Part shown: positions 21,043-62,200 of the stretch, piece after piece | How positions within the stretch are numbered: the stretch's first letter is position 1 | How the letters are laid out: each line of letters begins with the position of its first letter | Origin: Haliotis cracherodii | Lineage: Eukaryota | NCBI RefSeq assembly: GCF_022045235.1 | Contig: NW_027266297.1 | Location: forward strand, 37,324,001-37,388,000 | Length of the DNA: 64,000 bases | Direction of reading: 5' to 3' | The notes under the pieces: generated by a model | Database searches by the model: none | What the model saw: the letters and a program-made list of their open reading frames with translations, nothing else | Told to the model about the DNA's origin: nothing | Position numbers and translations under genes: made by a program

Positions 21043-21079
21043 AAAACTTGCTTGTTACAATTTTAGGACACTGTCCACA

Positions 21080-21118
21080 GGCCCTTTTCAGGGCCACCCA
21101 AATCATTACGAAAGAACT
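21080..21118 (+). terminator. Replication-dependent histone mRNA 3' stem-loop and purine-rich downstream element
   Basis: GGCCCT-TTTC-AGGGCC (21080-21095), then ACCCA, then GAAAGAACT at 21110. Confidence 0.95.
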
Positions 21119-21339
21119 TTTATATTGCCTAACAACCAATTTAATGTACTGCTGTTTCGTATGTGAAACAAGTCGCTTGCATTGGACATGCATTTATTCA
21201 GTATAAACTATTACTAAGACCTTGGGAAATGATTGAAATGCAATTCAAGTAATGTTTTTTCACATGATCGATTCATGAAAACCTTTTTAAAGGTTGTTTG
21301 AAAAAATAACTAGCTAGGCCCTAATTCGAAACTGGATGA

Positions 21340-50800: not shown

Positions 50801-53800
50801 CATCATGATTATCATAATTATCTGCACATTAACAATTCAACAAACAAATGAAAATAACCCCCAAAAAACAAACATTTATTCATCACTTAACAAAGTTAAA
50901 AAATTTGAATAATTATGCCATTTCTTTCCAGAAAGTCTATTCCCCTAAAGAGTTTATATCCTGATTACCAGAATTTCATGACATTACACTTTACCAACAT
51001 AGCATTCAGTGTAGAAAGTCCCAGACATGACTTACCGATATACTTGTCTGCCAGAGTGAGAACTGCCGCAAGGAGCCAGGGACTTGGCTTCAGCTCTGGC
51101 TCCAGATGCCGTCGTTTGCTGGAACCGTTCTGGGACGTATGAGAGATCAGGCCTTGGATCAACTCCACGAACGGGAACGGGTATTTCCCATATGCCATTG
51201 CTGGTAGGAGGAACTGACTGATTTGATCCGTGTACCTCGGACACAGGAAGATGCGACATACACACTGCAGGACATAGTGGCTGAAGGAAAGAAAAGTGGC
51301 GACAAATATAACAGGATTCAAAATTACAAATTCCATCTTTAATTTGTGTGTGAATGATTTTACTTATATGTTTGACATTACTAAAATGCTGTCACAACTA
51401 GTCAGTAGAGTATATATTTACTTGTTACGATATCCTTTCACTATGATTCCTACACCAAGCTTCAAACTAGAATAATTGCCTACATTTTTAAACCTGATGA
51501 CAAATCTTTCTCTCCTGTGACGTATTTGTAAACTCCATTATCAGTATCAGAATGTGGTTCAAATGACAGGTGTTAATGCTATGACCTTTGGTTGTCATAT
51601 CGTCTAATGATTTATTATTCTCATATGTTGGCTGGTGTGATCTGAATCTGACATAAACTGTTACCTAAACGTCTTGTCAGTTGCTGATGCAGCAAAGCTT
51701 AATGGATTCATGATGAGTTCAAAGATGCTGGAGGCTGCTGGGGTTGGAGGGATGGTAGTCTTTTCAATACTAGAGGGAACTTTCTCTGTCAGCAATGTGT
51801 ACATACACTCAAAATAACCTGCAAACACAATGTGGCAATATCTAAATATCATTCATACTGTCATCCATAAAAGTATGTGACAAACAAACAACAACAATTC
51901 TCCATACCTTGTCACTTCCAAAATTACAAAGTTGTACTTATGAAATATAAAAAGAAAAAATATTATCTTCCCACAACAGTTGTCATCAGTGCCTCAGTTC
52001 ACATAAAAAGTGTACTCCCAGGACCCTGTTCCAAAAAGAAAACATAGCACTACGACTGTCGTAAGTCTATGTTAAAGTATAGGATTTACAATCACCAAAG
52101 CACTACGATCGCTTTGTGGAACAGGACCCAGGAATGAAAAGAACTCTTCATGGTAATAGCTGATGTACATCATTCACTAGATTAGGAGTTTGAAATAAAG
52201 GGGGGGCTTGCTGCTTGCTTTTAAATGTATTGAACCCCTTAACCTATATTTCTTTACATTAGGACTCCTCGACTTTGATGCCTAATTCCGAACACTGAGA
52301 TTGCATTCTAGATGGAATGAGTTTCCAAGTCTAACCTCTCTGAACTAGATAGCTGAGTATCTGGCGTGTCAGCTGTGCCTCCGTCTGACCTGAGAGTCCC
52401 TTTATACACACAAATGTCTTGGATGAGGTAAACAATTCTAACATTCTCATTGGCACAGCAACGGGAGATGAAGTAGAGGCAATGCTATTCAGGTATCTGC
52501 AAAGAAAAAGATGATGATATATATCAGGCAGTTTAAGATCATGTGACACATATTATCCAGTGGTTCAACTGTCTATAATTCCAGGGACAGTCGGGTAGCC
52601 TAGTGGTTAAAGCGTTAGCTTGTCACGCCAAAGGCCTGGGTTCGATTCTCCACATGGGTACAATGTGTGAAGCCCATTTCTGGTGTCCCCTGCCGTGATA
52701 TTGTTAGAATATTGCTACAAGCAACGTAATACCACACTCACTCAAGCTATAATTTCCATGTTCTGTTTGATGAGGACTTACATTCAAGCCTCAATCCAAA
52801 TCACATTAACTTGCAACCATGCAATTAGCAGATTAGTAACCCTATGCATTGACTCCACCTATATATTTTCAGGCTTTCACCATATTTGTAATGTTCAGCT
52901 TCCTTTTGGAATAAACCCTCATTAAAACAATAATTTTGAGTATATTTCACTGGATTGTTCACCAAGTTTAGTAGTACTAGCAGAAAACACAGTTTTTAAC
53001 ACAGATGATGAAATGTGATATTGCACCCAATAACTGTGGTTCAGATATCAGCATGGATATACAACTGCTGTTTTAGTTAGTATGGTTTTACGTTGCTTTT
53101 AGCAATATTCCAGCAATATCATGGAATGGGACACCAGAAATGGGCTTCACACATTGTATCCATGTGGGGAATTGACCCTGTCTTCAGCGTGTCAAGCGAA
53201 CACCTAACCACTAGCCCACCCCACTGCAACTCCTATTGTGTCAGCCTGGGAGAGTGAGTCTTATGACGCTTTTACCAATACTCAAACAATAACACTCCAG
53301 GGGACACCAGAAATGGGCCCATGTGGGGAATGAAACTGGGCCTTCGGCGTGACGAGCGAACGCTTTAACCATATAGCTACCCCACTGCCCTTTTAGCCTG
53401 GGTGTATTTGCTGACCTAAACATAATGAGTGGGGATATTGCTACACTACCTTACACACAGCACAAGAAGATGTTTGAGCTGCTGCAAATTCTTATTGGAG
53501 TGAGCCAAGGTCTGAAGATAGGCCTCCTTCTGCTTGATGATCTGCTGGCACACTGACACCTGTAACCATGACAACAGTTATGTGTGGAGTCTCAAATAAC
53601 ATACAAGCTAGGATAGGGAACAATTTCTCTGTGGATATCCATGCAATTTGGATTCTCTCTACCACATCTTCAGGTGTCATTATCTACTTGCTACGGGCAA
53701 CAGGTAGGGATGTCATCGTATACATCATATGTTGATACTATATTGACACAAATCTATTAATAACGATAACTTAATTAATAATTCACTTCCACAGAAATGT

Positions 53801-59241: not shown

Positions 59242-62200
59242 ATGTTTTATCTGGTTGGTTTGGGGTTGGGGGATGTAAAAGATATAACTGTGAAAGGCCT
59301 AGAAGTTGTTAAGAATGCTGAAAGGGTTTACCTTGAAGCGTACACATCAATCCTGACAGTTGGCAAGGAAGCATTGGTAAATAATGTGTGGATATTTTAC
59401 TAAATATGTGATCGTTATTAGTCACTTTTCGTGATTTTCCGAAATATTAAAACAGATTATAATAATCAAGATCATGACAATATTCCATTTATTTCACTTG
59501 TTTCCTTCTTGAAATGTTTTCGTGAAACAAGATGGTAACACCAAATAATTGTCACTGAAGCCTACAATCTACGGTGTTGACTCAGTCCCCAGCTGGCTCA
59601 GTACTTATCCACTAGGCCCTATAGGTTATAAAATAATAAGGAAGAGAATATCCACCTGGTGAAGCAGTTAGCATATGCTCCGAAACGTTGTGTTCCTCAT
59701 AATAAAGAAGTTGACATCCATATATTCTCTTCCTGCACCTGATGAAGGAGTAAGCATATACTCCGAAACGTTGTGTTCCTCATAATAAAGAAGTTGACAT
59801 CCCTATATTCTCTTCCTTATGTTAATCACTTCTAAATGTCTTCCAAAGACCTAATAAAATAATAGACTAAAATAATGAACAGAATGATATTTTTTCAGGA
59901 GGAGTACTATGGACGAAAAGTAATTCTTGCTGATAGAGACATGGTTGAGCAACAATCAGGTACATTTCAAGGTTCATGTTCCACAAGAAATAGAGTTTCT
60001 GTTTCCACATATTGGTCATAATATTGAAAGTAGTTATTCCAGATAGTGAATTGTGTAGTTTTGACATGAACCCTGCTGGGGTTAACTAGAGATCGAGGTT
60101 ATAATATGCTAACCCAAGTATTATTTTCTCATATAACTGTTCGGAAATAGGGTAAGCGAGGATGTATGAGAATATATCATTTGGAAATATCGCCAAGTTT
60201 TAGCAATTAGTGCAGTTGCTTTTTAATCCTTTTACGATATCAGTCAGTGTATTATGTTACAGTATACAAGAAAGGAGGCATTGACAAATGCAGCCATGTT
60301 CTGCTGTGTTTTTCATGGCTGAATTAGGATCTCAGATCGTATAGCAATGTTCACTTCATCCTCATGTGTCTCTGGTGAATAGCAAAGATTAGTTGATTCA
60401 CTAATTCACCACTCATCATGATGCATCACGTTTCCATAAGACTTTCGGGACGTTCGGGTAGCCTTGTGATTAAAGCGTTCGCTCGTCACGTCGAAGACCC
60501 GGGTTAGATTCCTGACATGGGTACAATGTGTGAAGCCCATTTCTGGTGTCCCCCACTGTGATATTGCTGCAATATTGCTAAAAGCGGCGTAAAACCATAC
60601 TCACTCACTCACTCACCATAAGACTTTCATGTCGTAAGTTGGCATATGAATACTAAACGATGGGTTACATATTTATTAGTATCTTACCCATATTGTCATT
60701 GTGTCTGTAAATAGAAATTGTTTTTTAGAGCATCGCCAAATTGTCCTAGTTTGAGAATTATGTACACAACAAGTCTGATTGGTCTTTTTTGCTCATGTAT
60801 TGACCTCACTGTCACTTTGTGGATGATACACACAGTTGAAGCAACACATTTTGAGATTTGGTATCTCTAATTACAGATGAGTTGTTGGATGGTGCAGACA
60901 AGTCAGATGTGGCGTTTCTGGTAGTTGGAGATCCTCTTGGGTAATTTATATGATGCACTGTCACTGTGGATAGACGATCATGTGGCAATGTATTAGATAC
61001 TCATTTGTCTCAGACTCAATTATTTATATGCCACTGTGATGCTCACTCTATCAGTCACTGCATATGAGAACAAGAAGGAATTAATAAATCCACTTTAAGT
61101 TTTGTATTTCACAAACAGAATATTTTTGTTGTATGATCCAAACTTGACTGGAACAGTTGACTAAAACTTCCAACGGTCTTGCATCTTGAGCAAGAATGAA
61201 GTTGAAAATATGTTCAGGCAAAAGATTCAAAACAGTTTCAGTGGCTGGTGTGCATTGTCTGACGTCATGCATATTTTCACTTCCCTTAGATCTATAGCTG
61301 AGATTCTATACACTGATGCATCTAAGTATAACCACATTCATCATCTATAGTTCAATATGTTTAAATTAAGAATTTGTTATGATTGTTTTTAGAATTATTA
61401 AGAAAGCTTGTCTGTATAAAACAATAATTGTGGTGTAATAGTGTTTCATTGTTGACAGAGCGACAACCCACACTGACCTGATCCTACGAGCTGTTGAGAA
61501 GGGAATACAGTACCGAGTGGTCCACAATGCCTCCATCATGAATGCTGTAGGTTGCTGTGGCTTGCAGGTGGGTGGTTATGTGAGATGTTAAAGATACACT
61601 GGTCTCTACCATCTGGTGTCATGTCCCACTGAGGTCTTTTTGTAATTAGTGATTTTATTACATTGAGACGGGCTCAAATTCAGATATATTACAATCAACA
61701 GGAATAGTGGCAAAATTGCAGATTCGTCATTAAGCAGTAATCACCAGCTACCATGGCTACTGTGTTTGAAATTAAGCATGAAAGCCAAGTCCTTGTCATT
61801 GCTGGTGTGTTAATGTTAAAGATTTAGGTTGTCCCTTGATTCAATCCTACAGACACAAACTTAAAAAGTACCTCCCAAAACTTGGAACACTGCTCGATTA
61901 CAATGTAGCAAGTATGTCACAGTCACATGTCTTTAAGGACCCGTGAAGATTCCGGGGTAGAATAGGTCTTCAGCAACCCATGCCTGCCGTAAAAGGCGAC
62001 TGTGCTTGTCGTAAAAGGCGACTAACGGGATTGGGTGGTCAGGGGCTCGCTGACTTGGTTGATACATGTCATCGATCCCAATGTCAATCACTGGATTGTC
62101 TGGTCCAGACTCCATTATTTTACAGACCGCCGTCATATAGCTGGAATATTGCTGAGTGCGGCGTTAAACAACAAACCAAACCAAACCACATGTCTTTAAG

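What the first reader, a model, noticed from the sequence alone, without database searches (positions are those of the whole stretch)
59636..59820. Tandem minimal hammerhead ribozyme motifs in the sense strand of DPH5 intron 1
Seen: an 83-bp dimer. Copy 2 has CTGATGA(A), stem II GGAGTA/TACTCC, GAAA, palindromic AACGTT, a GUU triplet (predicted cut after 59772) and stem I gcac/gtgt. Copy 1 has CTGGTGA and a broken stem II. A perfect 16-bp inverted repeat brackets the dimer, and each unit has AATAAA. Established: minimal type I hammerheads with a palindromic stem III occur in Penelope-like element pseudo-LTRs and retrozymes and cleave as dimers. Inference: the two palindromes could pair so that an intact core cleaves DPH5 pre-mRNA roughly 130-210 nt upstream of exon 2; otherwise this is a relic of a small ribozyme-bearing retroelement family.
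Basis: partly seen in the sequence, partly recalled or inferred. Interest (0 to 1): 0.75.

Follow-up and report, generated by a model that had tools for sequence, protein, structure and literature searches.

The report
Penelope-like retroelement relic with hammerhead motif
The 83-bp dimer in the first intron of the diphthine synthase gene is the tail end of a common Penelope-like jumping gene that carries that family's usual minimal hammerhead ribozyme motif, so it is an ordinary relic rather than a newly evolved regulator.

Summary
Window 59653-59817 holds two 83-bp units. Unit 2 has a complete minimal type-I hammerhead (59735-59776). Unit 1 has CUGGUGA and a broken helix II. A 16-nt perfect inverted repeat brackets them.

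It is one insertion, 59639-59853, flanked by an 11-bp target duplication (ATAAAATAATA). Its layout is inverted 13-nt stub, two 5'-truncated 3' ends, then a 36-nt tail. That is the published Penelope-like element (PLE) insertion signature.

Longer copies in the same genome run upstream through a ~330-375-nt 3' UTR into a GIY-YIG-like domain and RT-homologous sequence. The exact 40-nt hammerhead occurs 178 times genome-wide.

The motif matches the 2014 'min-HHR' description feature by feature. A second, unrelated PLE family here carries the same architecture with different helices.

Genomic copies decay neutrally, with no within-family covariation. Rfam misses both families.

One spliced contig shows that intron 1 can be removed; no RNA ends were seen at the predicted sites. 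Cleavage of DPH5 pre-mRNA is unsupported.

This scan already holds 76 'hammerhead' notes for this genome. Known kind; low interest.

The parts
59628..59638 (.). left copy of the 11-bp target-site duplication ATAAAATAATA
   Evidence: longest shared string between the two flanks; sequence
59639..59651 (-). inverted 5'-truncated stub: reverse complement of the last 13 nt of a unit (AGGAAGAGAATAT)
   Evidence: the repeat finder I2; head-to-head inverted partners in 9 of 30 family loci
59653..59734 (+). unit 1: degenerate min-HHR (CUGGUGA at 59656-62, helix II 4 of 6 pairs, nominal site after 59689) plus about 45 nt of 3' sequence with AATAAA
   Evidence: differs from unit 2 at 59659, 59665, 59669, 59677, 59720
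59735..59776 (+). unit 2 minimal type-I hammerhead motif: helix I 4 bp, CUGAUGA, extra A, helix II 6 bp, GAAA, palindromic ACGU, U17, site after 59772
   Evidence: descriptor hit; the 40-nt core stretch 59736-59775 occurs 178 times exactly in the genome, reversed control 0
59777..59817 (+). rest of unit 2 up to the short-form 3' end ...CUCUUCCU (contains AATAAA)
   Evidence: 37 of 83 family unit HSPs end here
59818..59853 (+). PLE-type 'tail' extension (about 33-36 nt, TATGTTAATCAC...CAAAGACCTA)
   Evidence: 33 of 83 family unit HSPs carry this extension; alignment; a 30-40-bp tail is described for PLEs in PMC8557442
59854..59864 (.). right copy of the 11-bp target-site duplication
59242..59376 (+). 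DPH5 exon 1 (ATG at 59242)
   Evidence: PF00590 33.6 bits above cut-off 27.8; TIGR00522 positions 1-41, E 4.7e-14; spliced contig
59377..59898 (+). DPH5 intron 1 (GT..AG, 522 nt), host of the insertion
   Evidence: X1 contig joint 59375/59898 with cut +1
59899..59959 (+). DPH5 exon 2
   Evidence: TIGR00522 positions 47-67; X1 record 1 covers 59898-59959

Best explanation

Only the element's 3' end was copied, in the arrangement PLEs typically leave: a 13-nt inverted stub, two 5'-truncated 3' ends in tandem, and a 33-36-nt tail, all inside an 11-bp target-site duplication.

Each 83-nt unit is the last part of the element's 3' UTR (pseudo-LTR). In this family that part carries a minimal type-I hammerhead: no helix III loop, a palindromic ACGU, an extra A after A9, a 6-bp helix II and a 3-4-bp helix I.

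In the element's own tandem transcripts, two such motifs are thought to pair through the palindrome and cleave, weakly and perhaps only with the element's protein. This step is taken from the literature and was not shown here.

At this locus unit 2 still has the family's exact motif. Unit 1 has lost A6 and two helix II pairs.

The insertion most likely has no host function, although intron removal rests on a single spliced contig.
For: Shown here.

1. Layout and TSD.

2. Family behaviour in the same genome:
- Variable 5' truncation with a common 3' end.
- Direct tandems in 3 of 30 loci and head-to-head inverted partners in 9 of 30.
- Tail present in 33 of 83 unit HSPs and absent in 37.
- These are the PLE hallmarks listed in PMC8557442 (passages).

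3. Coding sequence upstream of the unit:
- L094 holds linker, GIY-YIG-like domain, 3' UTR, unit and tail contiguously.
- L064 adds an RT-homologous stretch (tblastn to L093 ORF aa 159-349, E 2e-43).
- The related intact 608-aa ORF L093:389-2212 has RVT_1 at 32.5 bits, above the 29.6 cut-off. Its C-terminal domain is 48% identical to the one upstream of our unit (E 4e-35).
- That domain aligns to PF01541-positive PLE endonucleases by hhalign (73%, E 3e-5).
- RT-region and EN-region matches lie collinearly at many genomic places. One RT match (C12:54701764-54702299) lies about 1 kb upstream of an exact HHR (C12:54703327).

4. [quoted passage not shown]

5. Independent family A: its ORF has GIY-YIG above cut-off and RVT_1 at E 1.4e-4. 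It carries CUGAUGA-G-ACUCGUAC/GUACGAGU-U-GAAA-GCGC-UA|GCC about 125 nt after its stop. It shares the geometry of cut site about 56 nt from the 3' end plus a 32-33-nt tail.

6. One spliced exon1-exon2 contig in run X1.
Against: - No Rfam hammerhead model matches, even at E<=10 on 201 nt. RF00163 finds nothing over its cut-off in the whole genome. The same models also miss the family A motif beside a PLE ORF, so this weighs little.
- Within the family there is no covariation: 92.1% of cells paired against 91.9 +/- 0.2 in shuffles (142 of 500 shuffles reach it), with one compensated cell.
- Only 29 of 51 near-complete units keep the core, and 17 of 51 fit the full descriptor.
- The lower non-CpG divergence of the core (3.6% against 6.6%, p 0.006) is inflated by two subfamily-marker columns and by non-independent rows.
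- Pfam GIY-YIG does not hit this family's C-terminal domain. BLASTP to the family A ORF is not significant.
- RT in this family is shown only by homology to a 48%-related ORF. Pfam finds nothing in the two decayed L064 pieces.
- Helix I is only 3 bp in most copies.
- Catalysis was not tested.
Confidence: 0.85

Rival explanations
1. The motif is a true PLE feature but not a working ribozyme. It is kept in the source elements for another reason, such as binding of the RT or priming, and never cleaves.
For: - Min-HHRs showed low or no cleavage in vitro (PMC4209133).
- The Anolis PLE hammerhead cleaved only with protein, catalytic mutants did not affect insertion, and no RNA-seq ends were found at its site (PMC11167929 passages).
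- Here the whole 3' module (unit plus tail) is about as conserved as the core. For example, nine copies are 77-81% identical to L015 in the 5' part but 83-94% in the 3' unit.
- Helix I is only 3 bp, and the active fold is about 15 kcal/mol above the MFE.
Against: - Two unrelated PLE families in this genome keep the same core and architecture with entirely different helix II, helix III and helix I sequences. This is what selection on the fold predicts.
- Core mutants abolished, and a compensatory double mutant partly restored, cleavage in the Anolis element.
Confidence: 0.2
2. A domesticated intronic ribozyme. The intact core of unit 2, paired through ACGU with unit 1, cleaves DPH5 pre-mRNA and tunes its expression.
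For: - The element is in the sense orientation in the intron, and unit 2 has the family's exact intact motif.
- A tandem partner supplies the palindrome.
- Intronic hammerheads derived from retroelements are known in amniotes (PMC6155905 passages).
- A contig of a second, differently labelled run (X15, kind unrecorded; taken as DNA from its even intron coverage) spans the left junction, so the insertion is not private to this assembly.
Against: - Unit 1 is decayed at A6 and helix II, as expected without selection.
- The motif is one of at least 178 identical copies.
- A spliced contig shows the intron can be removed. No ends or loose ends appear at 59689 or 59772, but the only raw reads were miRNA-seq, with 0 and 5 reads laid.
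- In X1 the intron's unique parts have zero depth, so neither retention nor cleavage products are visible.
- The fold is unfavourable.
Confidence: 0.04
3. A MITE or fold-back DNA transposon, with the 16-bp inverted repeat as its terminal inverted repeat.
For: A perfect 16-nt inverted repeat plus a target duplication. Many family loci show long inverted pairs.
Against: - Copies share a 3' end and are truncated at variable 5' positions.
- Longer copies are collinear with RT- and EN-like coding sequence.
- Inverted partners are of variable length and always head-to-head.
- The optional tail sits at one end only.
Confidence: 0.03
4. A non-LTR retrozyme: an 83-nt tandem that yields a tiny circular RNA.
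For: Tandem units with type-I hammerheads. Tandem arrays exist elsewhere (L002 with 4 units, L003 with 3). Five exact motifs lie within 1.2 kb at G000:C1:67136433-67137653.
Against: - Only one of the two units here has a complete motif. [quoted passage not shown]
- Most copies are single 3' ends attached to PLE sequence.
- The one 'goes back 81' joint in X1 contigs can come from genomic tandems.
Confidence: 0.03

Closest known systems
Minimal hammerheads (min-HHR) of metazoan Penelope-like elements (Cervera & De la Pena 2014, PMC4209133; parts 1-2 of 4 read)
   Same: CUGAUGA...GAAA core; no helix III loop; palindromic 15.2/16.2; an unpaired nucleotide between A9 and G10.1; G10.1-C11.1; long helix II; short helix I. 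Located at the PLE 3' end or pLTR. Mostly found as single motifs on truncated copies, sometimes close together on opposite strands.
   Different: A different sequence family. Helix I is 3 bp in most copies (4-5 bp reported for Schistosoma) and helix II is 6 bp (7-8 there). Whether this species' family is already in that paper's supplementary alignments could not be checked, because supplements are closed.
Family A PLE of the same genome (L034, L054 and others)
   Same: RT plus C-terminal endonuclease ORF, then a min-HHR in the 3' UTR. The cut site lies about 50-56 nt before the short-form 3' end, followed by an optional 32-36-nt tail.
   Different: No nucleotide similarity to this element. Helix II is 8-9 bp, the palindrome is GCGC and H17 is A. 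It inserts in (TA)n. Its endonuclease passes Pfam GIY-YIG, whereas this family's does not.
Poseidon PLE of Anolis carolinensis (PMC11167929; passages only)
   Same: A PLE hammerhead lacking helix III, a 'tail' signature and tandem organisation.
   Different: There the hammerhead overlaps the ORF start, and cleavage was shown to be protein-assisted. Nothing was assayed here.
Non-LTR retrozymes of animals (preprint 10.64898/2026.07.22.740005, part 1 of 5 read)
   Same: Tandem units with type-I hammerheads; argued there to derive from PLE pLTRs.
   Different: Here the unit is 83 nt, only one unit is complete, and the family is mostly attached to PLE coding sequence. That preprint reports retrozymes as excluded from introns, based on its analysis of two Xenopus species.
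Intronic hammerheads of amniotes, HH9/HH10 (PMC6155905 passages)
   Same: A type-I hammerhead in the sense strand of an intron, thought to descend from retroelement motifs.
   Different: Those are canonical, with tertiary contacts, and are conserved across classes of vertebrates. This one is a minimal motif in a decaying repeat copy.

Membership tests
PLE min-HHR (Cervera & De la Pena 2014) | Catalytic boxes C3UGANGA9 and G12AAA15.1, then U16.1 H17 | tested here: met
   Unit 2: 59739-45, 59765-68, 59771-72. Unit 1 fails (A6 to G at 59659).
PLE min-HHR (Cervera & De la Pena 2014) | [quoted passage not shown] | tested here: met
   A at 59746; G59747-C59764. Bulge column changed in 1 of 51 units; that pair counted as GC 41, GU 6 of 51 distinct rows.
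PLE min-HHR (Cervera & De la Pena 2014) | No helix III loop; positions 15.2/16.2 palindromic so that two copies can pair | tested here: met
   A-CG-U at 59768-71 and 59685-88. The CG is a CpG and is changed in 12 of 102 cells among copies.
PLE min-HHR (Cervera & De la Pena 2014) | Long helix II and short helix I | tested here: met
   Helix II 6 bp. Helix I 4 bp including G-U in unit 2 and 3 bp in the family majority.
PLE min-HHR (Cervera & De la Pena 2014) | [quoted passage not shown] | tested here: inconclusive
   Within this family none beyond shuffles. Between family A and this family all three helices differ while the architecture is kept.
PLE min-HHR (Cervera & De la Pena 2014) | Lies in the flanking repeat or 3' end of a PLE | tested here: met
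   Unit lies about 330-375 nt after the end of an EN-like ORF in longer copies. RT-homologous sequence lies further upstream.
PLE min-HHR (Cervera & De la Pena 2014) | Self-cleavage as a dimer | not testable with these tools
   Only a fold estimate: double-hammerhead structure -28.9 against MFE -43.7 kcal/mol. No informative RNA ends.
Rfam Hammerhead_1 RF00163 and other Rfam hammerhead models | Score at or above the gathering threshold | tested here: not met
   No hammerhead family listed at E<=10 nor at gathering. Best RF00163 hit in the genome is 24.5 bits against 34. Control: the family A motif is also missed.
Penelope-like element | Reverse transcriptase ORF | tested here: met
   Related intact ORF L093 has RVT_1 at 32.5 bits above 29.6. 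L064 of this family aligns to its RT part, E 2e-43. 95 candidate places for that RT stretch. Pfam itself finds nothing in the decayed L064 pieces. PLE-specific RT motifs were not tested.
Penelope-like element | GIY-YIG endonuclease | tested here: inconclusive
   PF01541 not found at E<=0.1. BLASTP to family A not significant. hhalign to PF01541-positive PLE endonucleases gives 73% probability, E 3e-5, over the GxxY...YxGxT...R...H stretch.
Penelope-like element | High 5' truncation, partial tandems, adjacent inverted 5'-truncated copy, 30-40-bp tail at one end (PMC8557442) | tested here: met
   The window copy shows stub, tandem and tail inside an 11-bp TSD.
Non-LTR retrozyme | Consecutive tandem units each with a complete type-I hammerhead | tested here: not met
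   Unit 1 lacks A6 and two helix II pairs.
MITE / DNA transposon | Fixed terminal inverted repeats at both ends of all copies; no 5' truncation series | tested here: not met
   Variable inverted partners and a 5' truncation series.

The most novel reading that the evidence does not exclude
The half-dead dimer still works. The intact core of unit 2, paired through ACGU with unit 1, cuts nascent DPH5 pre-mRNA after 59689, perhaps helped by PLE protein. A retroelement relic would then set a ceiling on diphthine synthase mRNA output, as an invertebrate counterpart of the amniote intronic hammerheads.
Probability: 0.04. Interest if true: 0.6.

Novelty: new member of a known kind. Interest (0 to 1): 0.17.

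Why it matters
It matters little for biology at large. PLE minimal hammerheads and their mass occurrence as truncated copies in animal genomes were described in 2014, and this is one more copy of one more family.

It is useful for the scan. It shows how to recognise these hits: an inverted stub, tandem 3' ends and a 33-36-nt tail inside a TSD. Rfam will not flag them. The same genome holds at least 178 exact copies of this motif.

Two family-level points may interest specialists:
- Two unrelated PLE families share the geometry of cut site about 50-56 nt from the 3' end plus a tail of about 33 nt.
- The two units of this single insertion carry different subfamily markers, which hints at two templates or two insertion events.

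Tried and rejected
Rfam
- cmscan at gathering on the whole window, and at E<=10 on 1501 and 201 nt, gave no hammerhead.
- I first read this as evidence against the motif. I dropped that after the control on a PLE-linked min-HHR also failed.
- RF00163 over the whole genome gave nothing over the cut-off.

Autonomous partner
- 30 GIY-YIG (PF01541) loci gave family A and a second family, but no similarity to this element.
- The link came instead from walking 5' along longer copies.

Dead ends
- L092, picked for a 592-aa open frame, turned out to be a translated minisatellite fused to an EN remnant.
- ARAGORN found no tRNA-like head in 10 loci, so the element is not a tRNA-derived SINE.
- Pfam on the EN-like piece and on two RT pieces of L064 gave nothing.
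- Within-family covariation: none.
- The per-site conservation test is suggestive but confounded.
- Small-RNA raw reads: 0 reads laid in X21 and 5 in X22. Such libraries would not capture 5'-OH or cyclic-phosphate ends anyway (my knowledge).
- Earlier scan notes gave no coordinates.

Not pursued
- A full-length copy between two exact motifs 2.1 kb apart (G000:C1:69867551 / 69869663) could not be fetched.
- Organism identity was not pursued.
- The supplements of PMC4209133, which hold per-species min-HHR alignments, could not be seen. They may already list this family.
Full report
**1. The observation**

- TRF reports 59653-59817, period 83, 2.0 copies, 93% matches.
- The repeat finder gives two 82-nt copies that are 94% alike. 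It also gives a perfect 16-nt inverted repeat (59636-51 / 59805-20) and a 13-nt one (59639-51 / 59722-34).

Unit 2 reads gCAC-CUGAUGA-A-GGAGUA-agcaua-UACUCC-GAAA-CG-UU|GUGU (59735-59776). Unit 1 has CUGGUGA, and only 4 of its 6 helix II positions can pair.

A descriptor I wrote hits the 64-kb window once on both strands. It hit no place in 60 first-order Markov simulations. The descriptor requires:
- the core boxes;
- 0-1 extra nucleotide;
- helix II of at least 4 bp starting G-C;
- a loop of at most 8 nt;
- a palindromic 0-4-nt inner helix III;
- U-H;
- helix I of at least 3 bp.

**2. Gene context**

- The ORF piece with exon 1 matches PF00590 above its cut-off.
- Three pieces match TIGR00522 (diphthine synthase) collinearly at profile positions 1-41, 47-67 and 67-88, each below the whole-protein cut-off.
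- A contig of run X1 joins 59376 to 59899 across a GT..AG intron of 522 nt.

The element sits in intron 1 in the sense orientation. The nominal sites after 59772 and 59689 lie 126 and 209 nt upstream of exon 2.

**3. What it belongs to**

The dimer has at least 360 candidate relatives in the same 1.18-Gb genome, of which 40 were scored. In the 30 loci fetched:
- the unit occurs alone in most;
- it forms direct tandems in 3 (L001, L002, L003);
- it has a head-to-head inverted partner in 9 (L004, L006, L008, L012, L019, L021, L022, L024, L028).

Alignments of flanks show a common 3' end and variable 5' truncation. After ...CUCUUCCU, 33 of 83 unit HSPs continue into a further ~33-36-nt extension, 37 stop, and 13 are other fragments.

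Craig et al. 2021 list exactly these traits for Penelope-like elements: high 5' truncation, partial tandems, an adjacent inverted 5'-truncated copy, and a 30-40-bp tail at one end (PMC8557442, passages).

The window copy shows all of them inside an 11-bp target duplication, ATAAAATAATA, at 59628-38 and 59854-64. Its parts are:
- inverted 13-nt stub (59639-51);
- unit 1;
- unit 2;
- tail (59818-53).

**4. The link to a PLE**

Searching the genome with the 5' part of the longest copy gave at least 1149 candidates, of which 40 were scored. Several of these copies run further upstream into coding sequence.

That sequence contains a domain with G-C-I-Y-Q-I-P-C-x-C-G-H-x-Y-I-G-E-T...R-L-K-E-H and ends ...A-I-D-I-R-R-H-Q-P-A-M-N-R-D-Q-G. 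Tests of this domain:
- Pfam does not call it GIY-YIG.
- BLASTP to the family A ORF is not significant.
- A two-row profile of it aligns to a two-row profile of PF01541-positive PLE endonucleases over the motif (hhalign 73%, E 3e-5).

A related intact 608-aa ORF (L093:389-2212) has RVT_1 above its cut-off. Its C-terminus carries the same domain at 48% identity (E 4e-35).

Copies of this family:
- L064 is collinear with that ORF from aa 159 to 602. It then runs through the 3' UTR, interrupted by a nested insertion, to the hammerhead unit.
- L094 holds linker, EN-like domain, ~375-nt 3' UTR, unit and tail without interruption.
- The RT-coding stretch of L064 has 95 candidate places, of which 40 were scored. 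Many lie at the expected ~330-470 nt upstream of EN-like matches.
- One RT match, C12:54701764-54702299, lies about 1 kb upstream of an exact hammerhead at C12:54703327.
- The nearest Atlas clusters of the L093 ORF are animal RT proteins, some with GIY-YIG (a lead only).

**5. Is the hammerhead motif real?**

Cervera & De la Pena 2014 (PMC4209133, parts 1-2 of 4 read) defined min-HHRs of metazoan PLEs. They named four features not imposed by their descriptor:
- a conserved G10.1-C11.1 pair;
- palindromic 15.2/16.2;
- consensus families with covariation.

They also described a long helix II and a short helix I. Unit 2 shows the first three features and both helix traits.

The exact 40-nt motif occurs 95 + 83 = 178 times in the genome, against 0 for the reversed control.

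A second, unrelated PLE family gives independent support. Its ORF has GIY-YIG at 27.5 bits, above the 22.6 cut-off, and RVT_1 at E 1.4e-4, below cut-off. About 125 nt after its stop it carries ggc-CUGAUGA-G-ACUCGUAC-gug-GUACGAGU-U-GAAA-GCGC-UA|GCC. The stricter scan found this motif in 15 of 30 GIY-YIG loci, and the relaxed scan found it on the ORF strand in 14.

This is the same architecture with different sequences in all three helices. The geometry also matches: the cut site is about 56 nt before the 3' end, with an optional 32-33-nt tail. In our family the figures are about 45-50 nt and 33-36 nt.

Rfam finds neither motif, so its silence is uninformative here.

**6. Results against a selected structure in the copies**

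On 55 units (51 distinct rows), the nine helix I and II pairs are 92.1% paired against 91.9 +/- 0.2 in shuffles. Of 500 shuffles, 142 reach that value, and there is a single compensated cell.

Of 51 near-complete units, 29 keep the core and 17 fit the whole descriptor. Losses cluster at the two CpGs (C11.1-G12 and C15.2-G16.2), as expected for neutral decay.

Non-CpG divergence is 3.6% in the core and 6.6% downstream (Fisher p 0.006 for all 51; p 0.08 for the 16 units ascertained without the motif). Two subfamily-marker columns and shared ancestry inflate that contrast, so I do not lean on it.

Constraint appears only at the level of source elements. Copies that are 77-81% identical to L015 in the 5' part are 83-94% identical in the 3' unit. 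That covers the whole 3' module, not the core alone.

**7. Function at this locus**

Min-HHRs cannot form helix III alone. Two copies pair through the palindrome (Forster et al. 1988 as cited there, not read).

Following the strands through that dimer, the core of one unit faces the cleavage site of the other. This is my inference from connectivity. Its consequences are:
- the intact core of unit 2 would cut after 59689;
- the site after 59772 depends on the defective core of unit 1.

A structure containing the double hammerhead reaches -28.9 kcal/mol, against an MFE of -43.7 kcal/mol. In the MFE the stub pairs with the end of unit 1, and unit 2 forms an extended rod.

Published activity is weak:
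- Min-HHRs cleaved weakly as dimers or trimers.
- The Anolis PLE hammerhead cleaved only with its protein, and catalytic mutants did not affect insertion in vitro.

Read evidence:
- X1 contains the spliced exon1-exon2 contig and no depth on the unique intron parts.
- No joint or end was listed at either site.
- The two raw-read runs are miRNA-seq, with 0 and 5 reads laid.
- X15 (kind unrecorded; taken as DNA from its even coverage of the whole intron) has a 773-nt contig spanning 59200-59697 with 12 differences and a 4-nt deletion. The insertion is therefore shared with that sample.

None of this tests cleavage directly.

**8. Verdict**

This is an ordinary, decaying insertion of a PLE 3' end that carries the family's known kind of minimal hammerhead. 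The regulatory reading is unsupported, and its predicted site is mis-assigned for the dimer.

The scan has 76 notes holding 'hammerhead' for this genome. One describes tandem plus inverted units within an 11-bp TSD.

Noticed in passing
window 59653-59817 (59677 and 59720 against 59760 and 59803): The two units carry different subfamily markers. Unit 1 has G (UGCUCC) and A; unit 2 has A and C. In the 51-unit alignment the G state (10 rows) always goes with A, and the C state (about 15 rows) always goes with A at the first site. The dimer may stem from two templates or two events, not one duplicated template.
   Followed up: partly
G000:C1:67136433-67137653 (+): Five exact 40-nt hammerhead motifs on one strand, spaced 319, 408, 362 and 92 nt. 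This is a retrozyme-like array with intact motifs.
   Followed up: no
G000:C1:69867551 and 69869663 (-): Two exact motifs 2112 nt apart in direct orientation. This is a candidate hammerhead-ORF-hammerhead full-length copy. It was not fetched.
   Followed up: no
L063, L064, L078, L086 (also L069, L071): Four copies have a 5'-truncated, (GTAA)n-tailed LINE-like sequence inserted within about 10-20 nt of the same spot, just 5' of the hammerhead, with its own duplications. Two others have a tRNA-derived SINE there. This looks like an insertion hot spot next to a TATATA run.
   Followed up: partly
L034, L040, L042, L044, L045, L047, L051, L053, L054, L055, L057, L061: A second PLE family (RT plus Pfam-positive GIY-YIG) has its own min-HHR, inserts into (TA)n, and has an optional 32-33-nt tail.
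   Followed up: yes
L093:2216-3001: The related intact 608-aa RT/EN ORF has no CUGANGA...GAAA motif in the 786 nt after its stop.
   Followed up: partly
L092:294-2009: This 571-aa 'ORF' is a translated minisatellite (HEETGEVT-type repeats) running into an EN-like remnant. It is not a gene.
   Followed up: yes
window 21075-21120 and 52589-52660: Histone 3' stem-loop (RF00032, 37.6 bits) and a tRNA-like hit (29.8 bits, just over the cut-off).
   Followed up: no
window 59659-59847, runs X1 and X15: Summed contig depth on the repeat is thousands-fold above the DPH5 exons (up to 10804 against 2.1 in X1). X1 holds RNA, as the spliced contig shows, so family sequence may be abundant in transcripts. 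One X1 contig 'goes back 81' (59771 to 59691), which is either a tandem or a circle.
   Followed up: no
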